IMG/VR virus record: IMGVR_UViG_3300047095_000752
Span: 124,001-188,000 of that record
Reading direction: 5' to 3' (one strand)
Length of the DNA stretch: 64,000 bases
In this document: positions 1-61,035 of the stretch, one piece after another
Position numbering within the stretch: position 1 is the stretch's first letter
How the letters are laid out: every line of letters begins with the position of its first letter
Notes under the pieces: model-generated
What the model was told of the DNA's origin: nothing
The model's database searches: none
The model's input: only the letters and a program-made list of their open reading frames with translations
Translations under genes and position numbers: made by a program

Positions 1-499
1 CGTCAATCTGAATTGGTCTATATTCGGGTGAAATTACAGGTAATTTATTTATAAAGAAAGTTCGATCATCAACTGCTTTGTAAAGTACATCGATAATCTT
101 ATTTCGGTCTCCACCCTCTTCACCGGTCGAAAAACGTATCTTATGGATGTTGTTTACAAATGCAGTCATACCATTAATATCACCCATATCATCTTCGACT
201 AAATTATTATTCGAATCCAGTGAAAATATGGCTTCCCCAGATAATAAGTCGGGGATGCGTCTAAAGATACGCTTCTCTAAAATATCATATAGAAATGGGT
301 GAACAACATTACAGTTTAGATCAATCCAAGAATAATTAGAACGTCTCTCTTTAGATCCTTCTACCCCGAAGATAGTTTCTGAATATAAACCTTGAGGGTG
401 GAAATTCATAGACTTATCGAAGTAGATTTGATGTGATGTTATAGCTTCTAGTGCCTTCTTTTCTTTTAAAAAGACATCTACGTGAATTGGTTCGATCAT
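1..499 (-). CDS. Phage multisubunit RNA polymerase beta'-like subunit, N-terminal part (runs off the left edge; absent from the ORF track)
   Basis: Hand translation from ATG at 499 (RBS GAGG): MIEPIHVDVF...HPQGLYSETIFGVEGSKERRSNYSWIDLNCNVVHP...NKLPVISPEYRPIQID. This matches RpoC motifs GLFxExIFG, RRxxxGxIxL...H and LPVxPPxxRP. No stop before the edge. Confidence 0.85.
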   Translation of the reverse strand, partial: MIEPIHVDVFLKEKKALEAITSHQIYFDKSMNFHPQGLYSETIFGVEGSKERRSNYSWIDLNCNVVHPFLYDILEKRIFRRIPDLLSGEAIFSLDSNNNLVEDDMGDINGMTAFVNNIHKIRFSTGEEGGDRNKIIDVLYKAVDDRTFFINKLPVISPEYRPIQID

Positions 500-515
500 A
501 AAAATACCTCTAAAA

Positions 516-523
516 ATTTGTCC
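516..523 (-). promoter_or_regulatory. Candidate phage promoter motif GGACAAAT
   Basis: Same 8-mer recurs in short intergenic gaps upstream of co-oriented genes (16968, 22106, 28285, 48040, 55209; variant 13251). Confidence 0.55.
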
Positions 524-2497: not shown

Positions 2498-3934
2498 CTA
2501 TGCTGACTGCTCATCGAATTCCTTCTGAAGAGTTAGGAATGTATTATTGAGTCCATTTGCGTATAGATTGGTATAAAACTTAATCACATCATCTTCTAAA
2601 TCGCTATATGTGATCTTGTTTATATACTGCCCATCTACAATATTAATAAGATTTTTCTTAGAGGCATTTAAAATACCACATATAGGACTGATGATATCAT
2701 ATTTTAATTTTTTCGAAGATATACCGAATATAGGAGTATTATCTTTTAATATGGTTGTTATGTCCCTCAATTTGTATGAGGACCGGGAGATGACAGTGTT
2801 ACTTTTAATAGGGCACAACAACAGAAATTCTGACAATACTGGATAATCCTTACAAAGTGTATTTTTACCCAGTATGTATAACAAAGCACCAATTAAAACA
2901 ATATGCTTTGGTGGCGCTGTTTTAAGTGTGTTGTAGGGTACGTTAAATACCTTGGATATGATTGGAAGTGTGAACAGTCTCAGGGCAGGATCTAGAGTTT
3001 TGATCCCGTCGAGACGTTCCTTCATATAAATAAATTCAATATCATTAATGTCGAATTCTTCTTCTAATAACTTCATTCCAAGCTTTGCTGCTTTTGAAAT
3101 TAAATCATTACAACAATAAACGTGGAATATATCTTTATGGATAAAGGATCCGTGTACACTTTCTGAGGAAGTGTATGACTCGTCGTATATCACTTTTTCG
3201 CGATACACTTCCTTCATCATCCACTTCAGATTATCATCAATTACCTTAACAAGAAAGAACACTGGATTCTGAGTTATATCCAAAAGTGACAGGAGATTCG
3301 TCATAATGAAATTAAAGGTACTCATGCACGTCGAAGATGGATCCTCCAGAGTCCGTAATTTGATCAATTCCCACATATAGCGGTCTGTTGTTGAGGATCT
3401 AAAATTTCGAGATCGGATCAACTGAAAGATCTTATCGGTCGTGCCGTACTGGACACAATCTCTTATAAAAGAATTATATATAGTCTTATTAATATTTTCT
3501 GGTACTTTTAATTGTGTGTCGTAGGAAAATATAGAAAAAATCTTTAAGCAAGTTGAGGTTAGCGCGATGTTATACATATCGGTCTCATCGAACAATATAC
3601 TCGTCGAAGATGCCTTCTTACGGTTTACGAATGAGGCAAAATCGATCTGTTTAAGTTCAATGTATTTTTTGACCAATGCTGTTAATTCATCCGTGGAATC
3701 TCGGATAAGCTCTGAGTTATATTTAGACTCAATATACTTAGCTAAAAGATCATAATACCAATCGGAGAATTCTGGAATTAACGCTACGATATCTTGAACT
3801 GTAGTGCTAACCGTCTCGAACCGATTTGATAGGGACGACTGACCAAGTTTGATATCTAGGTTGATATCCTCACAATCTTTTTTTGTTAAGATAATATTCC
3901 AGATCCGCTTTTCTAATTGATTGAAAAAAATCAT
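2498..3934 (-). CDS. Hypothetical helical protein (likely start 3934, MIFFNQ)
   Basis: Long ORF; the upstream 3976 start overlaps a sigma70-like promoter. Confidence 0.7.
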   Translation of the reverse strand: MIFFNQLEKRIWNIILTKKDCEDINLDIKLGQSSLSNRFETVSTTVQDIVALIPEFSDWYYDLLAKYIESKYNSELIRDSTDELTALVKKYIELKQIDFASFVNRKKASSTSILFDETDMYNIALTSTCLKIFSIFSYDTQLKVPENINKTIYNSFIRDCVQYGTTDKIFQLIRSRNFRSSTTDRYMWELIKLRTLEDPSSTCMSTFNFIMTNLLSLLDITQNPVFFLVKVIDDNLKWMMKEVYREKVIYDESYTSSESVHGSFIHKDIFHVYCCNDLISKAAKLGMKLLEEEFDINDIEFIYMKERLDGIKTLDPALRLFTLPIISKVFNVPYNTLKTAPPKHIVLIGALLYILGKNTLCKDYPVLSEFLLLCPIKSNTVISRSSYKLRDITTILKDNTPIFGISSKKLKYDIISPICGILNASKKNLINIVDGQYINKITYSDLEDDVIKFYTNLYANGLNNTFLTLQKEFDEQSA

Positions 3935-3963
3935 AGTATTTTCCCATAGTATAGTGTATAATA

Positions 3964-3993
3964 ATGGTACCATCATGGGCGGTGAAATGTCAA
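3964..3993 (-). promoter_or_regulatory. Sigma70-like promoter
   Basis: TTGACA-N18-TACCAT with TG. Confidence 0.5.
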
Positions 3994-16909: not shown

Positions 16910-16978
16910 TGTAATATCCTTTCAATGTTATTAGAATTAAATGGTTTACGTAAAATTCTTTACATATATTTGTCCGGT

Positions 16979-22065: not shown

Positions 22066-22128
22066 TTCAAATCTCCTTTATTTTTTAGTAATTTGAATTA
22101 TAACAATTTGTCCCGATAAATATTATAC

Positions 22129-28224: not shown

Positions 28225-28291
28225 ATTAAAAAAATAAATATATTTCTATACTCAATATTTAATATATATAATGTCTTTATATAAATTTGTC

Positions 28292-28678
28292 CTACGATTT
28301 GGCTTTGTAGTACTTTATACCAAGTTTGTCTAGCTCCGATTTTAACAATTGAATTCGCTCTTCGGAACTACTACAACAATCATTCTTTGTAATTGTATTT
28401 GAAACTCGGGTTGAATTCCAACCATATACTTTTCGCATTATACTAAGTGTGGTCATCTTTTGCTTTGAATTTTTATTTTCACACAGATTATATGTTATAC
28501 CATCGTCACCCTTTGGTTCCGAGTTTCTCAATATTGACTTTGATATTCCAGCTTTATTTATTAAAAACCCAACTAGACATTGACAGTCATCTTTATCGCA
28601 GAAGCTGCCTTTTATAAGCTTATCAGGTAACTGAACACGGGACGGCTTCTTGAGTGTGGGGGCTTTGACTGTTTTCAT
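28292..28678 (-). CDS. Hypothetical protein
   Basis: AAGGA RBS; CQCLVG motif. Confidence 0.55.
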   Translation of the reverse strand: MKTVKAPTLKKPSRVQLPDKLIKGSFCDKDDCQCLVGFLINKAGISKSILRNSEPKGDDGITYNLCENKNSKQKMTTLSIMRKVYGWNSTRVSNTITKNDCCSSSEERIQLLKSELDKLGIKYYKAKS

Positions 28679-29624
28679 TTTCGTATTCCTTTAGTCTAAG
28701 GTTAAACCAAGTGAGAAATTCATCTTGGTTGTATTTGGCTCTCTTGTCTGAGTTCTCGGTTCTTGTGATTATTCTTAAGTTTTCTCTTAAGTTGCAAATG
28801 GATTTGATTATGGCTTTATCATATTTTATGTCAAAATCGTTATCAACGAAAGCCGCTCGCGGAAATATATGATCCACTTCGTAAATATTTCTGAGATCGT
28901 GACGATGCTTTCTATTGTGTTTTGCTAGATATTTATTATTTAAAAAATCATTGTAGTTTGGATCATCTGATAGAATGTGAATTTGACTGTGGTGAAATGA
29001 TAAAAATTTTCGGCGAATATCTCTGGTCCGATCTATATTCCATCTCGTGTGGTTTTCACCTGATATACTTTTATAAAAACATTCTCTACATTTATAACCA
29101 TATTGAAAATCCCCAAATGTACGTTCAGATTTATGACCAGCCGGGCATTTCATTTCAAGTTTTGTATTAGCGTTTTTATATTCAGTGCTTAATAGAATAT
29201 AACCTGTAGATTCGATTGTTGATTTAACGTGTTCATATGAATGTTTTACTAAACCTGCGCATATCTTACATCTATTATTGTTATCTTTAAAACTATTAAA
29301 TATAACATCGTATGTATGATCTTTTGGGCATTTAACTGTTAATTTACTACAATTATTTTCATACACTCCCGATATATATTTATAACCTTTTGACTCTATA
29401 TAATTTATAACATCGTTTATATCTAATTTTCGTTTATTTAAACTGCATTGTTTACATCTACGTCCCGCTTTAAAATTGTTGTATATGGAGTAAAATATAT
29501 GATCATCGGGACATTTAATCTTTAGTTTATCACTATTTTTGGTATATGTTTTACTTAGTAGTTTATACCCGCTTTCTTTTTCAATTTCATTTTTAACATA
29601 TTCGTATTCTAATTTCTTAGGCAT
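28623..29624 (-). CDS. Zinc-finger-repeat HNH homing endonuclease (3 repeats)
   Basis: Three CPxxH..RCxxC repeats; DHIFPR...ICNLRENLRI. Confidence 0.8.
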   Translation of the reverse strand: MPKKLEYEYVKNEIEKESGYKLLSKTYTKNSDKLKIKCPDDHIFYSIYNNFKAGRRCKQCSLNKRKLDINDVINYIESKGYKYISGVYENNCSKLTVKCPKDHTYDVIFNSFKDNNNRCKICAGLVKHSYEHVKSTIESTGYILLSTEYKNANTKLEMKCPAGHKSERTFGDFQYGYKCRECFYKSISGENHTRWNIDRTRDIRRKFLSFHHSQIHILSDDPNYNDFLNNKYLAKHNRKHRHDLRNIYEVDHIFPRAAFVDNDFDIKYDKAIIKSICNLRENLRIITRTENSDKRAKYNQDEFLTWFNLRLKEYENENSQSPHTQEAVPCSVT

Positions 29625-31967
29625 TTATATCACTCCGTTGTCACTCAGATAATCTCCGATCAAGATGAACATACTGTCAGTATCGCCGTATGCAACATAT
29701 GGTAGATCGGAATTCTCAAAGTGTTCGATGTAGGATGTTTTAATAGTTGAATCATCCGTCTGTAAATAATTTGAAAGATGATATACGGAAAATTTAAGGG
29801 CTTCTTGACCTGTGCTGGTGATCGCTTTCGCCATATCTAGATTGTACATACGGAAAAATGGCAACCCCAGGATCCCATAAATGCTATTGCTGACAATTTT
29901 ATAACTGCTCTGTTTATTATCAAATTGCTTTAATTCTACCTTCATCCGCTCCTTAGTCACAGGATCCAGATCCGTATTTGTATTAATTTCTTGTCTAAGA
30001 TCGCCTAATTTCTTTTTATAAAGATCGCGCTGATCGCCCAAGTGAGTTAACACTTCGTGGAAGAATGATAGCTCAACTTCATGTTGAACAAAAAGGCATC
30101 CATTAATCGTTATAATATAATCATTCTTTACTATGAATTCTTCAAACTCAGCCGGAGTTAAATATATATCTTCGCTGGATCTAAGGATCGGATTAAGTGT
30201 AACCTTAATTTGATCCGGTAGTTGTGATTTTTTATATAGATATGAATATGCGTCTTTTTCTGACACTTTACCTTTGTATGTATTAGGTCCTATATTCATA
30301 GATTGAATTATTGATGGATACAGTGATTTAAAGTCAAAATCGACAACCCACTGGTGAACACCTACCTTTGGTTCCAGTACATATGCCCCTGAGAATGTCG
30401 CGTGATTTTGTTTTATTGAATTTCTGCATACTAAATTCTTATCCTTAGCGAACTTCAATAGAATTGGATCAACAAGACCAGATGTGGTCTCAGCCCGTCT
30501 CCAAGTACTACTACAAGTCTTTATAAGTTCAAATCGCAAATCTATATGGTGGAGAGCGTCTTCAAGTTCAGATAGCAGTACAGTATCAACCCCAGAATAT
30601 AATATAAACTTAACAAGATCACTTTCGTACATAGTATTAATGGTACCTTCAAAAGCGACTTTACCTTCACCCAGTACCTTCTGTGATATATTATTTAATT
30701 TATAACTTTCTTCTACATTTTGCGTAAGTTTTTTATATATTGCTAATTGGTCTACCATATATAGACCATATACTGTCGTCCCATAATATTCACTTATGTC
30801 AACATCAGCAAGTCCGATTGGAGACAATGAATCTACATCCAATCCCAATTTATGCATGCGATTTACTGTATAGGGCACATCGAATAGCTCTGAATTCCAC
30901 CCCGCCCAAACATCAGGATCGAGTTCTTTTGCTTTTTCTATAAATGCCGTTATAAGATCAGCTTCTGAGTCAAAAATCTTTATAATATATTCATTAATCT
31001 CTGGGAACACGCTTAAATTATCATATAAGCTCTTATGCCCTTTATTGTATGATGTTGTGTCCATTTCAGGTAGTTGTAGAATATAGACGTGTGTAGCCCC
31101 ATCACTGTCCAGTTTAAAAGATATCGAGTTAATCGGGAACTCAGCTTCAAGAGCGAATGGAAATGCTTTATGTTGTCCGGTATACACTTCAATATCCCAG
31201 TATAGTATCTTTAATTTATACTGGCATTCCGGTTCAGTTCTATTGTAATAATAGTCAATAGAATGTTTAATATCCGGTTTAACATCTTCTTCGTACATCG
31301 CTGTAGTTGGGAGAAGTCCAACTTTGGTTGTATGTAACTGTACGTCGGATACCTTCTTTATTATATCACTGTCTCTAATGTCCATAGGTACTGAATAGAA
31401 ATAAGTATCTTTTGAATTTACTGTGTGGTATTTTTTAGTTCCATTTGCATCTCTAAACACATATAGAATCTTACTTTTAAACTTATTGTATTGTATGTCA
31501 ATTAATATGTGATTTGAATCGTAACACCAATCGGGTAGTTTAAACGAGTGACATTTTGCTTCTTCATTTGTAACGACTGTGTTTATACTCTTTTCTCTAT
31601 TTTTAAAGTATAATTTAGATATGGTAGTAAATTGCTCTTCTACGAACGAATAGAAAAAGTCCAATTCACTACATACCTCGTCTAGATCATAAGTGATCAT
31701 CAACTTTATATCTTTATATTTAATACCTTTACCTACAACAGACTCAAACTTATCACCCAACTCGTCGTTAAACGTTTTCGTCACACCCTCCCCCATAATT
31801 ACAGTGAGTGTAGCATCTGTAGCTTTGATGTGATCTTCGGTTAGCTTACTTGTTGGATATATTTTATGATCTATCTTATCGAAGTTGTTAGTCTTCAAGA
31901 TCTTTTTGAATAACTTATTTTTTATAGTTTCTTGATTTGCATAAATTGCAATTGGAATTGAAGCCAC
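29625..31967 (-). CDS. Family B DNA polymerase, N-terminal subunit (UDG-like domain, 3'-5' exonuclease, palm motifs A-C)
   Basis: WDIEV (ExoI), GWNSELFD (ExoII), YSGVD (ExoIII), DFKSLYPS (A), KIVSNSIYG (B), YGDTDS (C); stop 15 aa after DTDS. Confidence 0.92.
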   Translation of the reverse strand: MASIPIAIYANQETIKNKLFKKILKTNNFDKIDHKIYPTSKLTEDHIKATDATLTVIMGEGVTKTFNDELGDKFESVVGKGIKYKDIKLMITYDLDEVCSELDFFYSFVEEQFTTISKLYFKNREKSINTVVTNEEAKCHSFKLPDWCYDSNHILIDIQYNKFKSKILYVFRDANGTKKYHTVNSKDTYFYSVPMDIRDSDIIKKVSDVQLHTTKVGLLPTTAMYEEDVKPDIKHSIDYYYNRTEPECQYKLKILYWDIEVYTGQHKAFPFALEAEFPINSISFKLDSDGATHVYILQLPEMDTTSYNKGHKSLYDNLSVFPEINEYIIKIFDSEADLITAFIEKAKELDPDVWAGWNSELFDVPYTVNRMHKLGLDVDSLSPIGLADVDISEYYGTTVYGLYMVDQLAIYKKLTQNVEESYKLNNISQKVLGEGKVAFEGTINTMYESDLVKFILYSGVDTVLLSELEDALHHIDLRFELIKTCSSTWRRAETTSGLVDPILLKFAKDKNLVCRNSIKQNHATFSGAYVLEPKVGVHQWVVDFDFKSLYPSIIQSMNIGPNTYKGKVSEKDAYSYLYKKSQLPDQIKVTLNPILRSSEDIYLTPAEFEEFIVKNDYIITINGCLFVQHEVELSFFHEVLTHLGDQRDLYKKKLGDLRQEINTNTDLDPVTKERMKVELKQFDNKQSSYKIVSNSIYGILGLPFFRMYNLDMAKAITSTGQEALKFSVYHLSNYLQTDDSTIKTSYIEHFENSDLPYVAYGDTDSMFILIGDYLSDNGVI

Positions 31968-33113: not shown

Positions 33114-33445
33114 AGCAGTTTTATAAAGTTGGGGTTATTTTTTATTAGGGCGAGTAACGAATGTGATAATACTTCGATCATTTGCTCATAGAAGGAGTCG
33201 TCATCCTCGTCTAGGTTTAGACCGGCTTGAATCAGTATAGCGTGAAGGATCTCGTGTAAAATTGTAACTTCCATTTTACCTTTAGCTAAGGAACGTTTTA
33301 TAACGAGTTTTAAATTCTCATTATCTGTGTACGCAGAATAGTCGCCATCCGGGGTCATTTTTGGCTCATCTTCAAATACAATCTGATAGGTTAATGGTGA
33401 TATATATATTTCTTTTAGATCTGTTATTTTTTTGGCATCGGACAC
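33110..33445 (-). CDS. HExxH zinc metallopeptidase-like protein (ImmA/IrrE-like)
   Basis: TILHEILHAI ... EQMIE. Confidence 0.65.
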   Translation of the reverse strand: MSDAKKITDLKEIYISPLTYQIVFEDEPKMTPDGDYSAYTDNENLKLVIKRSLAKGKMEVTILHEILHAILIQAGLNLDEDDDSFYEQMIEVLSHSLLALIKNNPNFIKLL

Positions 33446-34404
33446 TGTGTTGACCTCTCGGTTGTATCGGTTGTATTATATTCATTTATCTTTTCATTAA
33501 ACCAAGCCATAAATTCTTCTTGGTTGTATTTACCACCTTTAGTGTTGTTATCTTTTTCGTGTATTATTCTTAAGTTTTCTCGTAGGTTGCAGATCTCTTT
33601 TATTATAGCCGGATCGTATATATTATCTAAGTTGTTATCAATAAATGCTATTCTCGGTTGAATGTGATCTACCGTATAATCAGATCTGTCCCATATATTA
33701 CTTGATGTCTTGGCGAGTTTTTGAGATTGGACGTGATTGTTGTAATTCGGATCATCATTTAATATATGTATTTTTTTATAATCAAACGATAAATATTTAG
33801 TTCTAGTTTGTCGGGTCCGGTCAGTCATCCAACGAACGTTATTTTCACCAGACTTATTTTCATAGGAACATTCCCTACACCTAACATCATTATTTTTAAA
33901 ATTATCAAAGATCATTTCTATTTTATGATTTTTAGGGCACAGTAGTTCGTCTTTATTTTTACAGCCTTTATATTCGGAAATTAACGTATAGCCATGATCT
34001 TTATAATAATTAAATACAAAATCATGACTATATTGCATTTTTATCTTATGACATTCTATACATCTACGTCGAGTCCTAAAATGGCTAAAACTCATTTCTA
34101 TTTTATGACCTTTCGGACATATCAATTCATCTTTTGTCATACACCCTTTATATTTAGAATTTAATGTATACCCACGTTTTTTATAATAATTTTCTACATA
34201 ACTTTCATCAGTTCTTTTATTTATATTTGAACATTCTCTACACTTGTGTCCGTTTTTAAAACTATTGAATAGCATTTCTATTTTATGATTTTTAGGACAT
34301 AATAATGTATTTTTTGTACGGGTATTAACATATTGTGTAAGTAATGTGTATCCACGTTCTGCATAATAATTAAATACGAATTCATGTGTTAATTTGTTTG
34401 GCAT
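33424..34404 (-). CDS. Zinc-finger-repeat HNH homing endonuclease (3 repeats)
   Basis: Three CPKxH repeats; DHIQPR...ICNLRENLRI. Confidence 0.8.
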   Translation of the reverse strand: MPNKLTHEFVFNYYAERGYTLLTQYVNTRTKNTLLCPKNHKIEMLFNSFKNGHKCRECSNINKRTDESYVENYYKKRGYTLNSKYKGCMTKDELICPKGHKIEMSFSHFRTRRRCIECHKIKMQYSHDFVFNYYKDHGYTLISEYKGCKNKDELLCPKNHKIEMIFDNFKNNDVRCRECSYENKSGENNVRWMTDRTRQTRTKYLSFDYKKIHILNDDPNYNNHVQSQKLAKTSSNIWDRSDYTVDHIQPRIAFIDNNLDNIYDPAIIKEICNLRENLRIIHEKDNNTKGGKYNQEEFMAWFNEKINEYNTTDTTERSTQCPMPKK

Positions 34405-34429: not shown

Positions 34430-35206
34430 TTATTGAAATACTTGATCCATAGAATTTATGTTGTTTTGAATAAGAGCAAGAAGTACTTCCTTTACTCTGT
34501 CCGTCCATACGAATCGCAATTGTTCTGCCACGTTACATACATAATAGTCGGGTAACGATTCCTCTTCTGCGGGTAGGACCATATATTTCTGCTTAGATCC
34601 AATTAAATGCATGTTATCCAGAATACGCTGAGGTGCTTTCATTGGGTCGATCCCATTTATCCGGAAAAGATAACCTTTTGTACCGGGCGCAAAAGTTCGA
34701 TACTCTAGCATATTCCATAAGATCATCGCTTGTACCTGATACGGTGGCTTTCCCTTATATTCAGAAAGTGGCTTCGAAAAGTTCACGGATCCAGCAATCA
34801 ACTTAGAATTTTGATTACATAATTGTATAACTTCTTTTTCCGTGTCGACAATAAATTGCTTAATTTCATTTATGTTGATCTTCTCTACTTTCAAGATCAT
34901 ATCTAAGAGAGCTTGTACCTTTTCTTTGGTGTAAACCGGAAAGTTAGAGCGACGAATCACAAGTCCTTTTAGGTCGAATTCGGATACAGTTTTACCTTCT
35001 TTATTTTTTATAAAAAGACCATATTTCTTTTTTGTAAAGAATACCGCATTACTTGCCAATACTTCTTGTTTCAATTTTAGAGCATTATATTTGGGATTGG
35101 CTCGGTGCATCCTTATGAATTCGGGTAGTAGATCTTTATTTAAAATGTCTTCTAGCTTATGACACTCTTTTAAAACAATCTGTATAAGTTCTTCTTCGGT
35201 TTTCAT
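34430..35206 (-). CDS. Family B DNA polymerase, C-terminal subunit (rest of palm + thumb)
   Basis: LKQEV...FFTKKKYGL...KGLVIRRS (KKrY and KGxxxxRS motifs). Confidence 0.88.
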   Translation of the reverse strand: MKTEEELIQIVLKECHKLEDILNKDLLPEFIRMHRANPKYNALKLKQEVLASNAVFFTKKKYGLFIKNKEGKTVSEFDLKGLVIRRSNFPVYTKEKVQALLDMILKVEKININEIKQFIVDTEKEVIQLCNQNSKLIAGSVNFSKPLSEYKGKPPYQVQAMILWNMLEYRTFAPGTKGYLFRINGIDPMKAPQRILDNMHLIGSKQKYMVLPAEEESLPDYYVCNVAEQLRFVWTDRVKEVLLALIQNNINSMDQVFQ

Positions 35207-45097: not shown

Positions 45098-46087
45098 ATG
45101 CCTGACCTTATTCGGGATAAAATGTGGGTCGAGAAATATCGACCACGCGACCTGAAGGACTTAATCCTTCCGGATAATATGAAATCATTTTTTGAAAATT
45201 GTATAGCAAATAAATCGATACCAAATTTAATATTACATGGTCGCCCCGGAACGGGTAAGACTACATTAGCTCAAATATTAATTGATAATATAGTTGGTAC
45301 ATCCAGCGAAGACAGAGAATATAATTTACTACAATTGAATGGAAGTTTAAATACCGGTGTAGATACTGCCAGAAATCTTATAACCGGATTCATTAAGATT
45401 CCCGCCCTTAATGAATCACAATTGAAAATTATACATATTGACGAGGCAGACTACACATCCAGCGCGTTGCAAGCTGCCTTAAGAAATATAATTGAAGAGA
45501 GTGCATCTTCATGTCGATTTATTTTTACACTAAATTCTAAACATAAGATTATGGAAGCCTTATTTTCTCGTTGCCAATCGTTCGAATTTAAGAAAACCAT
45601 ATCTAAAGAATATATCCTAAAACATATAGCAAATATACTAAAAATTGAAACTGGTCTTGAAAATAAAGATAGTATTATCTCAGAACATATTAAAAGATCA
45701 TACCCAGATATTAGACGAATTATAAACGATGTCCAACAGACTGTTGTAGACAATGTAATATCAGAAGAAATAGTAATACAACATACATTTGAAGATGACA
45801 TTATAAATAATATTAAAGAATTTGGTAAATATGTAAAATTGAATGATAAAGTTGGATTGACATCCAAAATAAAAGAAATTGAAAAACTATTAAATGATAA
45901 TGATATAGATTATATTAATATATACGAAAAATTGTTCGAAGATGAGGGGATAAGCTTCGCATCAAAGATATTAGTAAGCGAACATTGTAATAAACATCAA
46001 GATACATTAGTACCTAATATGAACTTTATAGCAATGCTTTATAAAATAATCGAAACTATGTATAAAAAATTAAAACTGATATCATAA
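45098..46087 (+). CDS. Clamp loader AAA+ subunit (RFC small / T4 gp44-like)
   Basis: WVEKYRP, GRPGTGKTT, IDEAD, QAALR, SRC, PDIRR. Confidence 0.93.
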   Translation: MPDLIRDKMWVEKYRPRDLKDLILPDNMKSFFENCIANKSIPNLILHGRPGTGKTTLAQILIDNIVGTSSEDREYNLLQLNGSLNTGVDTARNLITGFIKIPALNESQLKIIHIDEADYTSSALQAALRNIIEESASSCRFIFTLNSKHKIMEALFSRCQSFEFKKTISKEYILKHIANILKIETGLENKDSIISEHIKRSYPDIRRIINDVQQTVVDNVISEEIVIQHTFEDDIINNIKEFGKYVKLNDKVGLTSKIKEIEKLLNDNDIDYINIYEKLFEDEGISFASKILVSEHCNKHQDTLVPNMNFIAMLYKIIETMYKKLKLIS

Positions 46088-47070
46088 TGAAAGATAAAGA
46101 AATATTACGGCAAGACCTGACTGCAAAGACGGGTCTTGCCTATTTTAACTCTATGGAGTTGATTACATTCTGCCCCCGATGTGAAAAAGATAGATTCCAC
46201 GGCGGACGTAGTCACGGTCACCTGTATATAAGTATAAACGACCCAATATTCAAATGTTTCCGGTGTGACTTTAAAGGCTTTATATATAAGTTATTTAAAG
46301 AACTTCAGTTAGATATAAACAAATATTATGATTTAGATACATTAAAGATCAACTGGTCTAAGACAGACTCAGACCGATTTGTCGATAAAGAGTATAATAC
46401 AGGAGTATTAGTACCGGTAATTAATAAAGATTTCTATACCGATAAGCTGAATTATATAAAGAGCCGAATTCCAAATTACGATGAAGAAATATTATCAAAC
46501 AACATTGTGTTTAATATAAAAGAATTCATAAGCTTAAATAAAATCAATATTGATAAAGAACAATCATTTATAGATTTCTTAGAGTCTAACTTCGTGGGAT
46601 TCCTATCAGCTAGAAAATCTCAGCTTATATGTCGTAATATAGATACAACCTCACAGTTCAGATACTTTAAAATCAAACTGTTAGATATATACTTTAAAGA
46701 TTTTTACGCTAAGCCGCTTGATTTATACAGTAATAAGGTTGTATTATGTGAAGGTGTATTTGATTTACATAACATTATAGCAAATGACAGAACTAAACCT
46801 ATAATCAAGAATTCGGCTATAATAGCGACAGCCTTAAACAATGATTATAAAAATACATTGATATCCGTACTAGATTATGTTAAAATTCCATTTGCAGATG
46901 TTATAATCTTTAGTGACGCCGACTTAAAAGAAGCGGACTATATGCCCATATACTTCAATAATGCTGCAAAGTCTGTTACCCTCTACTACAATTCTTTAAA
47001 TAAGGATTTTGGTACTCACTTAATAGACCCAGTTAAAATACCGATTACAAAATATATAAAAAGGAAATAA
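46087..47070 (+). CDS. DNA primase (T4 gp61-like; zinc finger + TOPRIM)
   Basis: CPRC..HLY..CFRC; LCEGVFD; FSDAD. Confidence 0.8.
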   Translation: MKDKEILRQDLTAKTGLAYFNSMELITFCPRCEKDRFHGGRSHGHLYISINDPIFKCFRCDFKGFIYKLFKELQLDINKYYDLDTLKINWSKTDSDRFVDKEYNTGVLVPVINKDFYTDKLNYIKSRIPNYDEEILSNNIVFNIKEFISLNKINIDKEQSFIDFLESNFVGFLSARKSQLICRNIDTTSQFRYFKIKLLDIYFKDFYAKPLDLYSNKVVLCEGVFDLHNIIANDRTKPIIKNSAIIATALNNDYKNTLISVLDYVKIPFADVIIFSDADLKEADYMPIYFNNAAKSVTLYYNSLNKDFGTHLIDPVKIPITKYIKRK

Positions 47071-48030: not shown

Positions 48031-48070
48031 AGAAATGGGGGACAAATGATTGTAACATAAGGAATTTTTT

Positions 48071-55207: not shown

Positions 55208-55239
55208 GGGACAAATTTAAAATAAATAGGAATTATATT

Positions 55240-58585: not shown

Positions 58586-60187
58586 TTATAATGTTTGGTT
58601 TATAAGGTAGCGACCACAATCCCATATTTTAACGGTATATTCTTTTGAGTACTTACTATATCTATTGCTAAAATTGTCATCTATATAATAAAAGTCTGGT
58701 TCAATGCTTGTAGAAATTTCGCATTGAGAATCTAATTTAAAATATCGCTTATTTATTAAAACTGGCATTCCAATACCCCAAATATAATCTATAACAGAAT
58801 GGTCTAGTTTAGTTCCACACCTCATGACAATATTATCCTTTATCAGTACCACAAATACAAGTTCATCATTATAATAATATCCAACATTAGTATCAGACTT
58901 AGTATATCCTTCTATGTGATTTTTATTTAAGAATTTTCGGGATATTCTTTTATTAATATATCTCATGTCACACTCATTGAAATCTATAATTTTGTTTAGA
59001 TTTAATTTTTCTTTTATTATTGACTGGATGATGTCGGATTTATATATCCATTCATCCTCAAATATATGTAATAAGTCAATACCTTTATTAAGACATAGAT
59101 TCGTTTTGTTTAAGTGGTATTGAGAGTCTTTACCTTGGAGTTCAGAATGCCAATACAATCCGTTAAATTCTATAGCTAAGTTATAGTCGGGTAAATAGAT
59201 ATCAAGTTCGAGAGGTGATATTATAGATCGATTTGAAGTTGATATGTTATAATCTATAGGTAAAATGGATTTAATAAAATCAACAATTTCGTTTTCATAT
59301 TTTGATGTATATGGTAGTGGATCGCATACATAGCATCTTGGTATTCGACCATTATCTAAATGATCTTCGAAGGTTGTGTTACAATCGTTACATTGAAATC
59401 TATATTTCTCATTTTTGACTCCATTGTAATTATATAAATTAAATAATGGAGTCAAAGATTTAAACTTATGTGAATTTAATATTTTATTGAATTTACGAGC
59501 TAATGATTTTTTTCTAAGTTTAGTCTTTCCTAAATCCGTTTTTAAATAATGTATTTCACCATAACGTTTTATGTTTGTTTCCTTTATTTTTTGTTTTACC
59601 GTATCACTTTGAAAAGTATATTTTACACCATACTTCTCTAAATTTGTTTTTTTGATATTATTTTGTATGGTTGGATTATTAAATGGGTTTTCAAATCCAT
59701 GTTGCTTTAAATTGGTTTGTTTAATTTGTTCTAAAATAATATCGGATTTGAGTGGGTTATCCACGCCATATTTTTTAAAGCACGTAGTTTTAATTTTCTC
59801 TCTACACTCATTATTTTCTTTCGAAAGAAATTCTTCAACCCCATATCTTTCTAAATTAGTTTTCTTTATTTTATCTCGTATTTGTTTAATTTGTGTTATA
59901 TACTCAACTCCGTATTTTTCTAAATTAGTTTTCTTTGTTTTTTCAGTTCTTTTTTGTATAAATTCTGGATCTTTAAACTTACACTTCGTCGAACAATAAA
60001 TATAAAACCCCTTAGCTAGATTTTTAAATTTTAATTTGTTATTACAAACCCTACAGTTAAGTTTTACATTAGGATTTATATATTTTATATAGAATTCTTC
60101 TTTAGAAGCTTCAGGATGAATTTTTGATAAGTGTGTCGATAATTGATTTATATTTGAATACTTTTTATCACATAGGCTGCAATCCAT
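58586..60187 (-). CDS. Homing endonuclease, PD-(D/E)XK/Vsr-like (Hef-type) with KxTNLEKYGV repeats
   Basis: Six K.T....(Y/H)G repeats; ELDIYLPDYNLAIEFNGLYWHS; HIFEDEW. Confidence 0.85.
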   Translation of the reverse strand: MDCSLCDKKYSNINQLSTHLSKIHPEASKEEFYIKYINPNVKLNCRVCNNKLKFKNLAKGFYIYCSTKCKFKDPEFIQKRTEKTKKTNLEKYGVEYITQIKQIRDKIKKTNLERYGVEEFLSKENNECREKIKTTCFKKYGVDNPLKSDIILEQIKQTNLKQHGFENPFNNPTIQNNIKKTNLEKYGVKYTFQSDTVKQKIKETNIKRYGEIHYLKTDLGKTKLRKKSLARKFNKILNSHKFKSLTPLFNLYNYNGVKNEKYRFQCNDCNTTFEDHLDNGRIPRCYVCDPLPYTSKYENEIVDFIKSILPIDYNISTSNRSIISPLELDIYLPDYNLAIEFNGLYWHSELQGKDSQYHLNKTNLCLNKGIDLLHIFEDEWIYKSDIIQSIIKEKLNLNKIIDFNECDMRYINKRISRKFLNKNHIEGYTKSDTNVGYYYNDELVFVVLIKDNIVMRCGTKLDHSVIDYIWGIGMPVLINKRYFKLDSQCEISTSIEPDFYYIDDNFSNRYSKYSKEYTVKIWDCGRYLINQTL

Positions 60188-60255: not shown

Positions 60256-61035
60256 TTAGATCTTGTGGTTCTCGAAGGTCCATTCCCCGTCTTCATTCCG
60301 ACTCATATCTTGATAAATGTTTGGAAACTCTTCCTTAAGTAAAGTAGCAATTTTATCAAATACAACTCGAATTTCTATCTCAGCGTGTTTGGATGTACGA
60401 AGCTCGATGACATGTCGTAGAGTCCGGTGATTGGCGGTGAAGACCATCTTACACATCTTACCTGTAGGGGCAATGCGTCGGAATGCGGAAGTTAAAATCT
60501 TCTTAGTATCAAAGTCTTTAATATTATCAATGTCATATATTTTTTCGAGTTCTTTAATTGATTTTTCAACACTTAGAACCGCATCTTGAAATACTTTATA
60601 TGCTTCTTCGTTATCTTTAATAATATCTGGAGCATACATAGAAATATCGTCGCAACGAATGTATCGATCTGATGACTGTGCATAGGCGGTTCCTGCCCTA
60701 TGCCGGACTAACTCATGAGTAGCTACACGAGATAGCTCCAACAGAAATCCGACGTTACAATGCTCTAGAACTGAACCGTGCCCGGATTTAAGAATGTTAT
60801 TGATATAGATATCATTACCTTCTCTTACACGAGAAATATTCTTATTTTCAAATGTACCATCTTCTTTAGACCACGATTCATAGCAATTTCTACCGGCAAA
60901 TTCAATTAATGATTCGGCACAGGTAACACCAAGTGCTGGTTTCCATGCGATTTCATTGTCGCTAAGATAATCCCACAGTCCTGATGTAATTTGAGTCTTT
61001 GAAATGATATACACTTTGGGGTCTGTAATTCTCAT
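60256..61035 (-). CDS. thyX: FAD-dependent thymidylate synthase
   Basis: GHGSVLEH; SRVATHELVRHR...AQSSDRY; N.R.LRH..ELR....AE.EIR. Confidence 0.93.
   Translation of the reverse strand: MRITDPKVYIISKTQITSGLWDYLSDNEIAWKPALGVTCAESLIEFAGRNCYESWSKEDGTFENKNISRVREGNDIYINNILKSGHGSVLEHCNVGFLLELSRVATHELVRHRAGTAYAQSSDRYIRCDDISMYAPDIIKDNEEAYKVFQDAVLSVEKSIKELEKIYDIDNIKDFDTKKILTSAFRRIAPTGKMCKMVFTANHRTLRHVIELRTSKHAEIEIRVVFDKIATLLKEEFPNIYQDMSRNEDGEWTFENHKI

What the first reader, a model, noticed from the sequence alone, without database searches (positions are those of the whole stretch)
1..499. Multisubunit RNAP beta' lacking the zinc-binding domain, in a phage with a T4-like replisome
Seen: GLYSETIFG is followed after only six residues by RRSNYSWIDL, so the four-Cys zinc-binding domain found between these motifs in cellular RpoC is absent. 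The gene is preceded by the same GGACAAAT motif as structural genes. Known: phiKZ-like phages encode msRNAPs but use a highly divergent DNA polymerase, whereas this window has canonical PolB, gp44-like and gp61-like genes. Inference: a member of a poorly characterised msRNAP-encoding phage lineage; the enzyme may be autoregulated or virion-packaged.
Basis: partly seen in the sequence, partly recalled or inferred. Interest (0 to 1): 0.65.

Follow-up and report, generated by a model that had tools for sequence, protein, structure and literature searches.

The report
Phage RNA polymerase gene fractured by split intein
The flagged ORF is the first piece of a lake jumbo phage's virion-type RNA polymerase beta' subunit. 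Its missing zinc domain is normal for that family, but the gene is cut into three ORFs, and two of them are probably rejoined as protein by an unusually lopsided split intein sitting in the enzyme's trigger loop.

Summary
In detail: window 2-499 (minus strand) encodes the start of an RNAP beta' homologue in which six residues replace the four-Cys zinc domain, and GGACAAAT precedes it. The missing zinc domain is not special. AR9's virion and non-virion beta'N, Listeria phage LPJP1 and all metagenomic orthologues lack it too. The odd copy is this phage's second, contiguous 902-aa beta', which keeps four Cys.

The record is a 245-kb lake-water phage with two msRNAP sets and a T4-type (but split) PolB. 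The flagged gene is only 306 aa. The rest of this beta' lies left of the window in two more ORFs. P0002 (496 aa) carries DFDGD and ends in a 23-aa N-intein. A Hef-like homing endonuclease gene and a small ORF follow. P0003 (518 aa) starts with a 256-aa C-intein that runs into the trigger-loop motif SFHTGG.

Relatives show the empty site, the same intein unsplit, and the split form. The catalytic residues are invariant, the fold matches inteins, and co-folding passes its controls. Orthology and a late-promoter-like motif (GACA-N6-TR, compare AR9 AACA-N6-TR) point to the virion RNAP. This is a new variant of the known "fractured gene" arrangement, in a new host gene.

The parts
2..499 (-). First 166 codons of the 306-aa N-terminal subunit (P0001) of the virion-type RNAP beta' (set B). 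It has no zinc-binding domain.
   Evidence: ORF. phrog_2986 E 1.3e-37 and Pfam PF00623 positions 1-49. Best annotated hit is AR9 g145, virion RNAP beta' N-terminus. The rest lies left of the window, on the minus strand, in genome coordinates G000:C1 (window = genome - 124000): P0001 123579-124499; 108-aa ORF 123234-123560; 120-aa ORF 122856-123218; P0002 (DFDGD plus 23-aa N-intein) 121344-122834; endonuclease P0004 119606-121324; small ORF about 119334-119603; P0003 (256-aa C-intein plus 262-aa C-extein) 117767-119323.
511..523 (-). Late-promoter-like motif GGACAAAT-N3-T-R. In AR9's frame GACA is -11..-8 (window 522-519), T(-1) is 512 and the predicted start A(+1) is 511. The Shine-Dalgarno AGAGG is 511-507.
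   Evidence: Sequence. Genome-wide statistics and consensus. AR9 late consensus A(-11)ACA-N6-T-A/G(+1): PMC7598289. AR9 g145 is itself preceded by AACAAAT-TAT-TA. The start site is inferred, not measured.
16968..16975 (-). Another intergenic GGACAAAT copy, 58 nt upstream of a 197-aa ORF
22106..22113 (-). Another intergenic GGACAAAT copy, 40 nt upstream of a 178-aa ORF
28285..28292 (-). Another intergenic GGACAAAT copy, 60 nt upstream of a 102-aa ORF
48040..48047 (+). Another intergenic GGACAAAT copy, 23 nt upstream of a 237-aa ORF
55209..55216 (+). Another intergenic GGACAAAT copy, 23 nt upstream of a 135-aa ORF
58586..60187 (-). Second copy (41% identity) of the Hef-like/DUF7487 homing endonuclease family that sits between the intein halves. 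Here it stands free, downstream of a ThyX-like gene.

Best explanation
The flagged ORF is the 306-aa N-terminal subunit (clamp region up to the start of Rpb1 domain 2) of the virion-type multisubunit RNA polymerase of an uncultured freshwater jumbo phage. Like its AR9 and LPJP1 orthologues it has no zinc-binding domain.

The remainder of this beta' is encoded downstream as a 'fractured gene'. P0002 carries the catalytic DFDGD, the funnel and bridge region and the first half of the trigger loop, and ends in a 23-residue N-intein (Cys1, blocks A and N2). A free-standing Hef-like homing endonuclease gene and a small ORF follow. P0003 begins with a 256-residue C-intein (block B His, a degenerate endonuclease-like insert, blocks F and G ending in His-Asn) fused to the C-extein. 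The C-extein starts with Ser at the trigger-loop motif SFHTGG.

Inferred mechanism: after translation the short N-intein tail docks into the large C-intein and completes a Hint fold. Protein trans-splicing then joins ...EKIMK to SFHTGG..., giving a 735-residue beta' C-terminal module with an intact trigger loop, two residues before the catalytic His. The endonuclease is the mobility engine that inserted at the DNA level into a loop of a formerly contiguous intein.

The genes of this polymerase (beta'N and betaC) are led by GGACAAAT-N3-TR. This is inferred to be a late promoter read by the phage's second polymerase, the contiguous set A that keeps the zinc domain. That would match the phiKZ/AR9 scheme, in which virion RNAP is made late and packaged.

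Shown: the sequence architecture, homology, fold, conservation, allelic series and predicted docking. Inferred: actual splicing, packaging and promoter use.
For: Identity as beta'N:
- Family matches, DFDGD in P0002, Rpb1_5.
- An internal ruler against the contiguous paralogue shows P1, P2 and P3 cover it in order without loss.

Virion-type:
- Reciprocal best hits to AR9 g145/g264 and phiKZ gp80, which is annotated 'structural head protein'.
- The tree puts set B with the virion clade, support 85/96.

Intein:
- Junctions line up with the paralogue and with cellular beta' at ...LTMR|TFHxGG.
- About 20 relatives have the empty site ...SEKIMK|SFHTGG in one roughly 720-aa chain, and about 25 end 20-28 aa after a conserved Cys.
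- In 19 C-intein sequences (28-87% identical) H50, V237-Y238-D239, N256 and S257 are invariant.
- 17 of 19 match Pfam Intein_splicing. Ours covers profile positions 39-155 only, so the first 38 positions are missing as expected.
- The AF2 model has pLDDT 83. The top 50 Foldseek PDB hits are all inteins, best E 1.7e-8.
- The exhaustive search finds 29 split-form and 10 contiguous-form representatives at E<=1e-30. The contiguous ones have both junctions in one chain.
- In the model of a contiguous form the tail-equivalent segment is structured, and the break point maps to a loop with pLDDT below 50.
- Co-fold of the P0002 tail with P0003 1-300: score 0.76, best control 0.01. The mark was reached by 51 of 78 solved complexes and 2 of 108 mismatched pairs. 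Runs agree in at least 27% of contacts and partner pLDDT is at least 52. Contacts come from tail residues 484-493 onto hairpin 6-26 and block F 236-240.

Endonuclease: phrog_3339/559 and DUF7487; 37% identical to AR9 g146/g265.

Real DNA: the same layout occurs in independent assemblies and in 100%-identical contigs from other lake samples that bridge the junctions.

Promoter.
Against: - No experiment shows splicing, packaging or transcription starts, and no RNA run holds the locus.
- Our own C-intein is below Pfam's cut-off (14 bits against 35.8), and a sequence profile found no solved intein.
- The co-fold pass may reflect likeness to solved split inteins rather than binding by this pair (the tool's caveat).
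- Support for the virion clade is moderate (85/96), with long phiKZ branches. Set A does not resolve with the non-virion clade.
- No homologue of AR9's promoter-specificity subunit gp226 was found, so who reads GGACAAAT is unproven.
- Only two motif-led operons have virion-type annotation.
- The record is only about 78% complete.
Confidence: 0.75

Rival explanations
1. The halves are never ligated. The intein pieces act only as a non-covalent dimerisation module (or are inert tails), and the polymerase works with a physically split trigger loop, as an extra subunit boundary.
For: Jumbo-phage RNAPs tolerate many subunit breaks. Here beta' also breaks after about residue 300 and beta is in two genes. 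AR9 g264 and its LPJP1 orthologue end at or next to the same trigger-loop position with no recognisable intein. The predicted docking would serve dimerisation equally well.
Against: The nucleophile Cys1 (Ser in a minority of relatives), the block-B His, the terminal Asn and the +1 Ser are invariant or nearly so across 28-87% identity, while the middle of the intein drifts. That pattern is expected for chemistry, not for mere binding. The break lies two residues from the catalytic trigger-loop His, where 279 foreign residues would be hard to accommodate.
Confidence: 0.15
2. The set B beta' is a decaying gene, wrecked by mobile elements and no longer functional. The phage would rely on set A or on the host polymerase.
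For: Several homing-endonuclease genes litter the genome. The gene is in three pieces with unrelated small ORFs between them. The beta gene has been relocated and split.
Against: All pieces are open, with their own Shine-Dalgarno sites, and catalytic motifs are intact. The same architecture is maintained in relatives down to 36% identity. The exteins are as conserved as in uninterrupted relatives: 46% identity to P0051 over 537 columns.
Confidence: 0.04
3. The interruptions are removed at the RNA level (group I or II introns carrying the endonuclease), as in AR9 g145, and not at the protein level.
For: AR9's orthologous gene has two group I introns with endonucleases of the same family.
Against: No intron family was found in the 9 kb around the genes, even at E<=1. 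The sequences flanking the endonuclease are translated intein blocks in frame with the exteins. Contiguous relatives carry the same intein as one ORF.
Confidence: 0.03
4. The arrangement is an assembly artefact of a metagenomic contig.
For: The record is an uncultured, linear, roughly 78%-complete IMG/VR contig.
Against: An identical layout appears in a 123-kb contig from another run at 71% protein identity. Contigs from four further lake samples match at 100% and bridge the P0002/endonuclease and endonuclease/P0003 borders. Dozens of separately predicted proteins begin or end at the same intein break.
Confidence: 0.01

Closest known systems
Virion RNAP beta' of Bacillus phage AR9/PBS1 (g145 N-terminal part, g264 C-terminal part) and relatives (Listeria LPJP1, Staphylococcus S6-like phages, Yersinia phiR1-37)
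   Same: Best annotated homologues, 26-32% identity. Same zinc-domain-less N-terminus with a G-S-K-E-R linker. Same late-promoter frame in front of the gene (AACA-N6-TA against GACA-N6-TA). The gene is invaded by the same Hef-like endonuclease family (E 1e-58). AR9 g264 ends at the same trigger-loop motif and is followed by such an endonuclease.
   Different: AR9 splits beta' after the DPBB domain (PMC7598289), whereas ours splits before DFDGD. AR9 uses group I introns, ours a split intein. AR9's non-virion beta' is split and lacks the zinc domain, whereas ours is one 902-aa chain with four Cys. The polymerases are unrelated: T4-type PolB here. A ThyX-like gene here argues for thymine rather than uracil DNA. 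No gp226 homologue was found.
'Fractured genes' of Dassa et al. 2009 (NAR 37:2560; PMC2677866): a split intein with a free-standing homing endonuclease gene between the halves, mostly in phage metagenomes
   Same: The two gene halves keep order and orientation. The intein halves flank a free-standing endonuclease gene. The source is an environmental phage.
   Different: The host genes there are DNA synthesis and repair enzymes, and RNA polymerase is not mentioned. Here the split lies after block N2 (23-aa N-intein) rather than at the canonical position. The C-intein retains a large degenerate insert. An extra small ORF accompanies the endonuclease.
Natural atypical split inteins AceL-TerL (N-intein 25 aa) and GOS-TerL (37 aa)
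   Same: A very short N-intein that must dock into a large, nearly complete C-intein. Found in environmental phages (PMC11766414).
   Different: Their host gene is terminase, ours is RNAP beta'. Their C-inteins are 104-115 aa, ours is 256 aa. Ours uses Cys1/Ser+1. For ours the unsplit, conventionally split (P0041) and empty-site alleles are all on record.
phiKZ virion RNAP (gp180, gp80 and partners)
   Same: Two-polymerase strategy. P0002 matches only gp80, which is annotated as a structural head protein.
   Different: Very distant (25% identity over 136 residues). Different split sites, different promoters, divergent PolB.
Cellular RpoC (beta')
   Same: Rpb1 domains 2 and 5, NADFDGD, and the trigger-loop motif RTFHxGG at the intein site.
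   Different: No zinc-binding domain in set B. Three ORFs. No Rpb1_1 match above the cut-off.

Membership tests
Multisubunit RNAP beta' (RpoC/Rpb1) | Double-psi beta-barrel with the Mg-binding NADFDGD loop (Pfam Rpb1 domain 2) | tested here: met
   The domain is shared between two ORFs: P0001 residues 234-282 match profile positions 1-49 (37 bits) and P0002 residues 38-112 match positions 90-164 (58 bits), both above the 25.3-bit cut-off. MADFDGDQMA is in P0002.
Multisubunit RNAP beta' (RpoC/Rpb1) | Bridge helix and trigger loop region (Rpb1 domain 5) | tested here: met
   P0002 matches PF04998 with 35 bits (cut-off 28.5). The trigger-loop motif SFHTGG is at the start of the P0003 extein.
Multisubunit RNAP beta' (RpoC/Rpb1) | N-terminal four-Cys zinc-binding domain between the GLFxxxIFGP and RRxRMGxIxL motifs (bacterial beta') | tested here: not met
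   Six residues (VEGSKE) stand in place of the roughly 30-residue Cys cluster. The domain is present in the paralogue set A and absent in AR9 and LPJP1 orthologues.
Multisubunit RNAP beta' (RpoC/Rpb1) | Rpb1 domain 1 (clamp core) recognised by Pfam | tested here: inconclusive
   PF04997 E 0.05, 13 bits against a 39.7-bit cut-off. The PHROG match (E 1e-37) covers residues 15-272.
Jumbo-phage virion RNAP (vRNAP) beta' | Orthology to experimentally virion-associated subunits (AR9 g145/g264, phiKZ gp80) | tested here: met
   Reciprocal best hits. Clade support 85/96, found in 86% of bootstrap trees. This support is moderate, not decisive.
Jumbo-phage virion RNAP (vRNAP) beta' | Physical presence in the virion | not testable with these tools
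   Uncultured phage. Virion proteomics are needed.
Jumbo-phage virion RNAP (vRNAP) beta' | Canonical beta' split site just after the DPBB domain (PMC7598289) | tested here: not met
   The break is inside Rpb1 domain 2, before DFDGD (between profile positions 49 and 90). A second break lies in the trigger loop.
Intein (Hint domain) | Nucleophile (Cys or Ser) as first intein residue, with blocks A and N2 | tested here: met
   Cys474 of P0002 directly follows the extein end ...EKIMK. Cys occupies this position in most of the ~35 split and contiguous relatives inspected, and Ser in a few (P0047, P0164, P0167). The tail matches the N-termini of contiguous inteins.
Intein (Hint domain) | Block B His, blocks F and G ending in His-Asn, +1 Ser/Thr/Cys | tested here: met
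   H50, V237-Y238-D239, N256 and S257 are invariant, and H255 is at least 90% conserved, in 19 sequences.
Intein (Hint domain) | Hint fold | tested here: met
   AF2 model pLDDT 83.4, pTM 0.84. The top 50 Foldseek PDB hits are all inteins, 17 of them at E<=1e-3.
Intein (Hint domain) | Pfam PF14890 above the gathering score | tested here: inconclusive
   Ours scores 14.2 bits against 35.8. However, 17 of 19 family members match at E<=0.1, the best at 3e-7.
Intein (Hint domain) | Protein-splicing activity | not testable with these tools
   Only indirect evidence: residue conservation and predicted docking, score 0.76 against control 0.01.
Fractured gene (Dassa et al. 2009) | Two co-oriented gene halves ending and starting with intein halves, with a free-standing homing endonuclease gene between them | tested here: met
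   P0002, then P0004, then a small ORF, then P0003, all on the minus strand. The layout is conserved in L013 and L015.
Fractured gene (Dassa et al. 2009) | Endonuclease of the Vsr-like, GIY-YIG or HNH families | tested here: inconclusive
   P0004 matches DUF7487 (E 3e-25), PHROGs 'homing endonuclease'/'HNH endonuclease' (E 1e-121 and 6e-91) and, only weakly, the Vsr-related REase_MTES_1575 (E 0.0012, below the cut-off). It is homologous to AR9 'Hef-like' endonucleases.
Atypical (short N-fragment) natural split intein | N-intein of roughly 40 residues or fewer, complemented by a near-complete C-intein | tested here: met
   N-intein 23 aa, C-intein 256 aa. Known examples have 25 and 37 aa.

The most novel reading that the evidence does not exclude
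Trans-splicing is not just tolerated parasitism but an obligatory, possibly timing-controlling maturation step of a virion-packaged RNA polymerase. The trigger loop, and hence catalysis, would be completed only when both late-expressed halves meet. This would occur in a phage lineage that joins phiKZ/AR9-type dual msRNAPs to a T4-type replisome, and so falls outside the current jumbo-phage groups.
Probability: 0.12. Interest if true: 0.85.

Novelty: new variant of a known kind. Interest (0 to 1): 0.62.

Why it matters
- **Inteins.** This is a natural split intein with a 23-residue N-fragment, a class known from very few examples and valued for protein labelling. Nature also supplies the empty site, the contiguous form, a conventionally split form and a neighbouring second intein. 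How a contiguous intein becomes split by an endonuclease insertion can therefore be studied directly.
- **Transcription.** The most conserved catalytic elements of a phage msRNAP (the trigger loop here, and the DFDGD loop in a sister lineage) are intein hot spots. A virion polymerase may need protein splicing to become active.
- **RNAP evolution.** The contiguous, zinc-domain-bearing second beta' and the non-canonical split sites argue against a single inherited split site (the cyanobacterial-origin idea in PMC7598289). They bear on the debate whether phage msRNAPs are primitively multi-part (PMC7824862).
- **Phage taxonomy.** Two msRNAPs combined with a T4-type PolB blur the group 1 / group 2 distinction among jumbo phages.

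Tried and rejected
- **Intron.** Rfam at E<=1 over 9 kb found no intron family.
- **Sequence profile against PDB.** The C-intein profile found no intein, only a marginal 27-residue SUMO resemblance that I take for chance. The fold search then succeeded.
- **C-extein counterpart.** None found in AR9, LPJP1 or phiKZ. This is uninformative at such divergence.
- **AR9 gp226.** No homologue of the promoter-specificity subunit by blastp or phmmer.
- **Capsid type.** Pfam Gp23 found nothing and PHROG scans did not identify a capsid gene, so the type stays open.
- **Small gap ORFs.** The 108-aa and 120-aa ORFs between P0001 and P0002 have no Pfam or PHROG hits and no usable Atlas lead. They are conserved only in the closest relative and not across the clade, so I treat them as cargo of unknown function rather than RNAP subunits.
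- **Variants lacking the endonuclease or intein.** None seen in contigs from four other lake samples. Short contigs cannot prove absence.
- **Set A as non-virion.** This assignment rests on best hits only. The tree leaves set A unresolved at the base of the phage clade.
- **Complex prediction.** The tool was unreachable on thirteen attempts before it ran. As a substitute I also folded a contiguous homologue.
- **Second intein at SFH|TGG.** Present in the 93%-identical relative but absent here.
Full report
**Setting.** The window is bases 124001-188000 of a 245,225-bp linear IMG/VR virus record, estimated at about 78% complete and 34.8% G+C. Near-identical DNA occurs in at least 24 lake-water metagenome runs, and no RNA run holds it. 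I laid the whole record in the Python box and fetched the region to the left of the window (L002 = genome 110001-126000).

**Checking the observation.** The feature lies on the minus strand. An ORF starts at window 499 and runs off the left edge. The complete gene has only 306 codons. It matches phrog_2986 'RNA polymerase beta subunit' (E 1.3e-37) and the first 49 positions of Pfam Rpb1 domain 2.

The genome holds a second, contiguous beta' of 902 aa (set A, genome 55285-57993). It serves as an internal ruler. At the same point it carries a roughly 30-residue insert with C-x-C ... C-x-x-C. So the zinc-binding domain is truly missing from the flagged copy.

The loss is not peculiar to this phage. 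AR9 g145 (virion beta'N), AR9 g270 (non-virion beta'N), the Listeria LPJP1 orthologue and three metagenomic orthologues all lack the Cys cluster. The virion-type ones share a short G-S-K/P-E-R linker. The unusual copy is set A, which keeps the four Cys.

**The GGACAAAT motif.** It lies at window 523-516 (minus strand), 16 nt before the ATG.
- It occurs 22 times against about 8 expected. Seventeen copies lie in the 6.9% of the genome that is non-coding, each oriented toward the next ORF, mostly 16-75 nt upstream.
- The extended form is GGACAAAT-N3-T-R-T-A-A, and the R position is a purine in 17 of 17 copies.
- In the frame of AR9's experimentally defined late promoter, A(-11)ACA-N6-T-A/G(+1) (PMC7598289), it reads GACA-N6-T-R.
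- AR9's orthologous gene g145 is itself preceded by AACAAAT-TAT-TA.
- The motif also leads set B betaC, an operon with a 1513-aa virion/tail lysin next to the large terminase, and a PHROG 'virion structural protein'.
- A second, AT-rich motif (TATATATAT followed by TATTG) marks about 20 other upstream regions. Its core stands in front of set A beta'. It resembles AR9's annotated early promoters.

I infer that GGACAAAT marks late promoters read by the other polymerase, not autoregulation. The start sites are predicted, not measured.

**Which polymerase it is.** The genome has two sets, as phiKZ and AR9 do.
- Set A: beta of 1012 aa and beta' of 902 aa.
- Set B: betaN of 546 aa (86724-88364), betaC of 827 aa (77830-80313), and the fragmented beta'.

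Set B pieces hit AR9 g145 and g264 (annotated as virion RNAP) and phiKZ gp80 (annotated 'structural head protein') best. Set A hits AR9 g270/g154 and phiKZ gp74 best. A maximum-likelihood tree of the C-terminal module, rooted on cellular beta', groups set B and its metagenomic kin with the virion subunits (support 85/96). It leaves set A unresolved at the base. 'Virion-packaged' is therefore supported by orthology, at moderate strength.

**What the gene really looks like.** Downstream of the 306-aa ORF come, in order:
- two small ORFs (108 and 120 aa, no family hits);
- P0002 (496 aa);
- P0004 (572 aa; phrog_3339 'homing endonuclease' E 1.6e-121, DUF7487);
- a small ORF of about 89 aa;
- P0003 (518 aa).

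Each has its own ribosome-binding site. P0002 resumes Rpb1 domain 2 at profile position 90 and holds MADFDGDQMA. The first break is thus a clean fission before the catalytic loop, not the canonical post-DPBB split described for phiKZ and AR9. A relative with the simplest layout has beta'N (309 aa), a 120-aa ORF, the beta' remainder (723 aa) and beta (1367 aa) in a row. This fission is therefore ancestral to the clade.

**The split intein.** P0002 follows the paralogue up to ...AAQ..SEKIMK and then ends with 23 foreign residues that begin with Cys. P0003 has 256 foreign residues ending in His-Asn and then continues with SFHTGG. In cellular beta' this is ...LTMR|TFHxGG, two residues before the trigger-loop His. 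The evidence that the foreign parts are two halves of one intein is as follows.
1. *Allelic series.* About 20 relatives read ...SEKIMK|SFHTGG... in one roughly 720-aa chain. About 25 end 20-28 residues after the Cys (Ser in one of them).
2. *Conservation.* Across 19 C-intein sequences that are 28-87% identical, the block-B His, block F V-Y-D, the terminal Asn and the +1 Ser are invariant, while the central roughly 130 residues drift.
3. *Family match.* 17 of 19 match Pfam Intein_splicing. Ours covers only profile positions 39-155, so exactly the N-terminal part is missing.
4. *Fold.* The AF2 model (pLDDT 83, pTM 0.84) finds only inteins among its top 50 PDB matches.
5. *Exhaustive search.* A profile search of 1.84 billion representatives finds 29 split-form and 10 contiguous-form clusters at E<=1e-30. 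The contiguous ones carry both junctions in one polypeptide, with inteins of 260-393 residues and a LAGLIDADG-like motif in the consensus.
6. *Break point.* In a model of a contiguous form, the segment equivalent to our tail is structured and the break point falls in a low-confidence loop.
7. *Co-folding.* The P0002 tail with P0003 1-300 scores 0.76 against a best control of 0.01. That mark was reached by 51 of 78 solved complexes and 2 of 108 mismatched pairs. The runs agree in at least 27% of contacts and the partner's pLDDT is at least 52. The contacts come from tail residues 484-493 onto the first hairpin and block F of the C-intein. The tool warns that such a pass may reflect likeness to solved split inteins.

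Rfam finds no intron. The layout recurs in independent assemblies and in 100%-identical contigs from other lakes that bridge the borders.

**How it most likely works (inferred).** The arrangement is the 'fractured gene' of Dassa et al. 2009, in which a free-standing endonuclease gene has landed inside an intein and split it. That paper lists DNA-metabolism host genes and never RNA polymerase. Here the cut lies after block N2, so the N-intein has 23 residues. That is the rare 'atypical' class, known from AceL-TerL (25 aa) and GOS-TerL (37 aa).

The short tail should dock into the nearly complete C-intein. Splicing would then produce a 735-aa beta' module with an intact trigger loop. The endonuclease is 36-37% identical to AR9's 'Hef-like' endonucleases g146 (inside an intron of g145) and g265. 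The latter stands directly after g264, which itself ends at the same trigger-loop motif. The same endonuclease family therefore haunts the same gene in distant phages.

**Further variation in relatives.**
- The 93%-identical relative and several others carry a second, contiguous intein three residues further on (SFH|TGG).
- One lineage (P0041) is split at the conventional position, after block B.
- Another lineage (L016) appears fractured by a different split intein directly after DFDGD.

**Context claim.** The window's PolB (29625-31967, minus strand) is closest to T4-type gp43 of cyanomyoviruses, KVP40-like and other T4-like phages (26-30% identity). It is unrelated to AR9's polymerase. It stops just after motif C and is followed by an HNH-type endonuclease gene. 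A clamp-loader-like AAA+ gene and a primase homologous to AR9 g225 lie at 45098-47070. In Iyer et al.'s scheme, msRNAPs go with a divergent PolB (group 1) and a classic PolB goes with no RNAP (group 2). This phage combines the two.

**Literature.** Within the searchable library I found no report of an intein in a jumbo-phage msRNAP gene.

**Verdict.** The real point of interest is the architecture of the gene: a non-canonical fission plus an atypically split intein, with a free-standing endonuclease, in the trigger loop of a virion-type RNAP, in a lineage that mixes jumbo-phage hallmarks. Splicing, packaging and promoter use remain to be shown experimentally.

Noticed in passing
genome 55285-57993 (minus strand; L011:11285-13993), outside the window: The second beta' (set A) is one contiguous 902-aa chain that keeps a four-Cys zinc-binding insert. 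It is the phage beta' least diverged from cellular ones (29% identity). Published phiKZ/AR9 non-virion beta' subunits are split after the DPBB domain, and AR9's lacks the Cys cluster.
   Followed up: partly
window 29625-31967 (-), 28623-29624 (-), 34430-35206 (-), 33424-34404 (-): The T4-type PolB ends just after motif C (YGDTDS) and is followed by an HNH-type endonuclease gene. A weak candidate for its thumb part (phmmer E 1.6e-4) lies upstream at 34430-35206 and is also followed by an HNH-type endonuclease gene. The polymerase may be a second fractured or permuted gene.
   Followed up: partly
window 60256-61035 (-): A ThyX-like gene (RHR...S-x-RY signature) suggests the phage makes dTMP and has thymine DNA, unlike its nearest cultured relatives of the AR9/PBS1 type, which use uracil. 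This is relevant to how the GACA promoter element is recognised.
   Followed up: no
about 20 upstream regions genome-wide, e.g. window 2498-3976 ORF upstream (near window 4040) and window 41201 ORF upstream: A conserved AT-rich motif, A-(T/C)-TATATATAT-W-W-A-N-TATTG-W, resembles AR9's annotated early promoters (AAATATATATTAT). It is the likely early (virion-RNAP) promoter. Its core precedes set A beta'.
   Followed up: partly
L016:7467-8147 and L016:10001-12049 (relative, protein P0029): In a sister lineage the same beta' appears fractured by a different split intein, directly after the catalytic DFDGD. The N-half starts with Ser and the C-half ends ...VQD before Thr. A beta-helix protein gene and a methyltransferase gene lie between the halves instead of an endonuclease.
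   Followed up: partly
proteins P0005, P0014, P0016, P0017, P0019, P0020, P0022, P0026 (relatives): A second, contiguous intein is inserted three residues downstream of the split one (SFH|TGG), in P0020 with a LAGLIDADG domain. It is absent from this genome. The trigger loop is an intein hot spot with two insertion points.
   Followed up: yes
AR9 KU878088.1 220773-223776 (L027:1774-4777): AR9's virion beta'C (g264) ends at the same trigger-loop motif (...KAFH plus 16 residues) and is followed by a free-standing Hef-like endonuclease (g265) homologous to P0004. No counterpart of our C-extein was found in AR9, so the AR9 enzyme may lack that module or encode it in unrecognisable form.
   Followed up: partly
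genome 86724-88364 and 77830-80313 (minus strand): Set B beta is split into a 546-aa and an 827-aa gene about 6.4 kb apart and far from the beta' genes. Relatives encode one beta of 1354-1370 aa directly after beta'. An adjacent 475-aa ORF (88400-89827) weakly resembles the beta N-terminus too.
   Followed up: partly
genome 123234-123560 and 122856-123218 (window -766..-440 and -1144..-782): Two small ORFs (108 and 120 aa) fill the gap between the first two beta' pieces. The 108-aa one is 91% identical in a relative whose beta' pieces are only about 71% identical. It has no family, fold or Atlas lead.
   Followed up: partly
L013:16382-18583 (relative contig): The 71% relative carries a 733-aa ORF with faint Cas12/TnpB-like RuvC hits a few kb downstream of the beta' cluster. 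I did not look for a counterpart in this genome.
   Followed up: no
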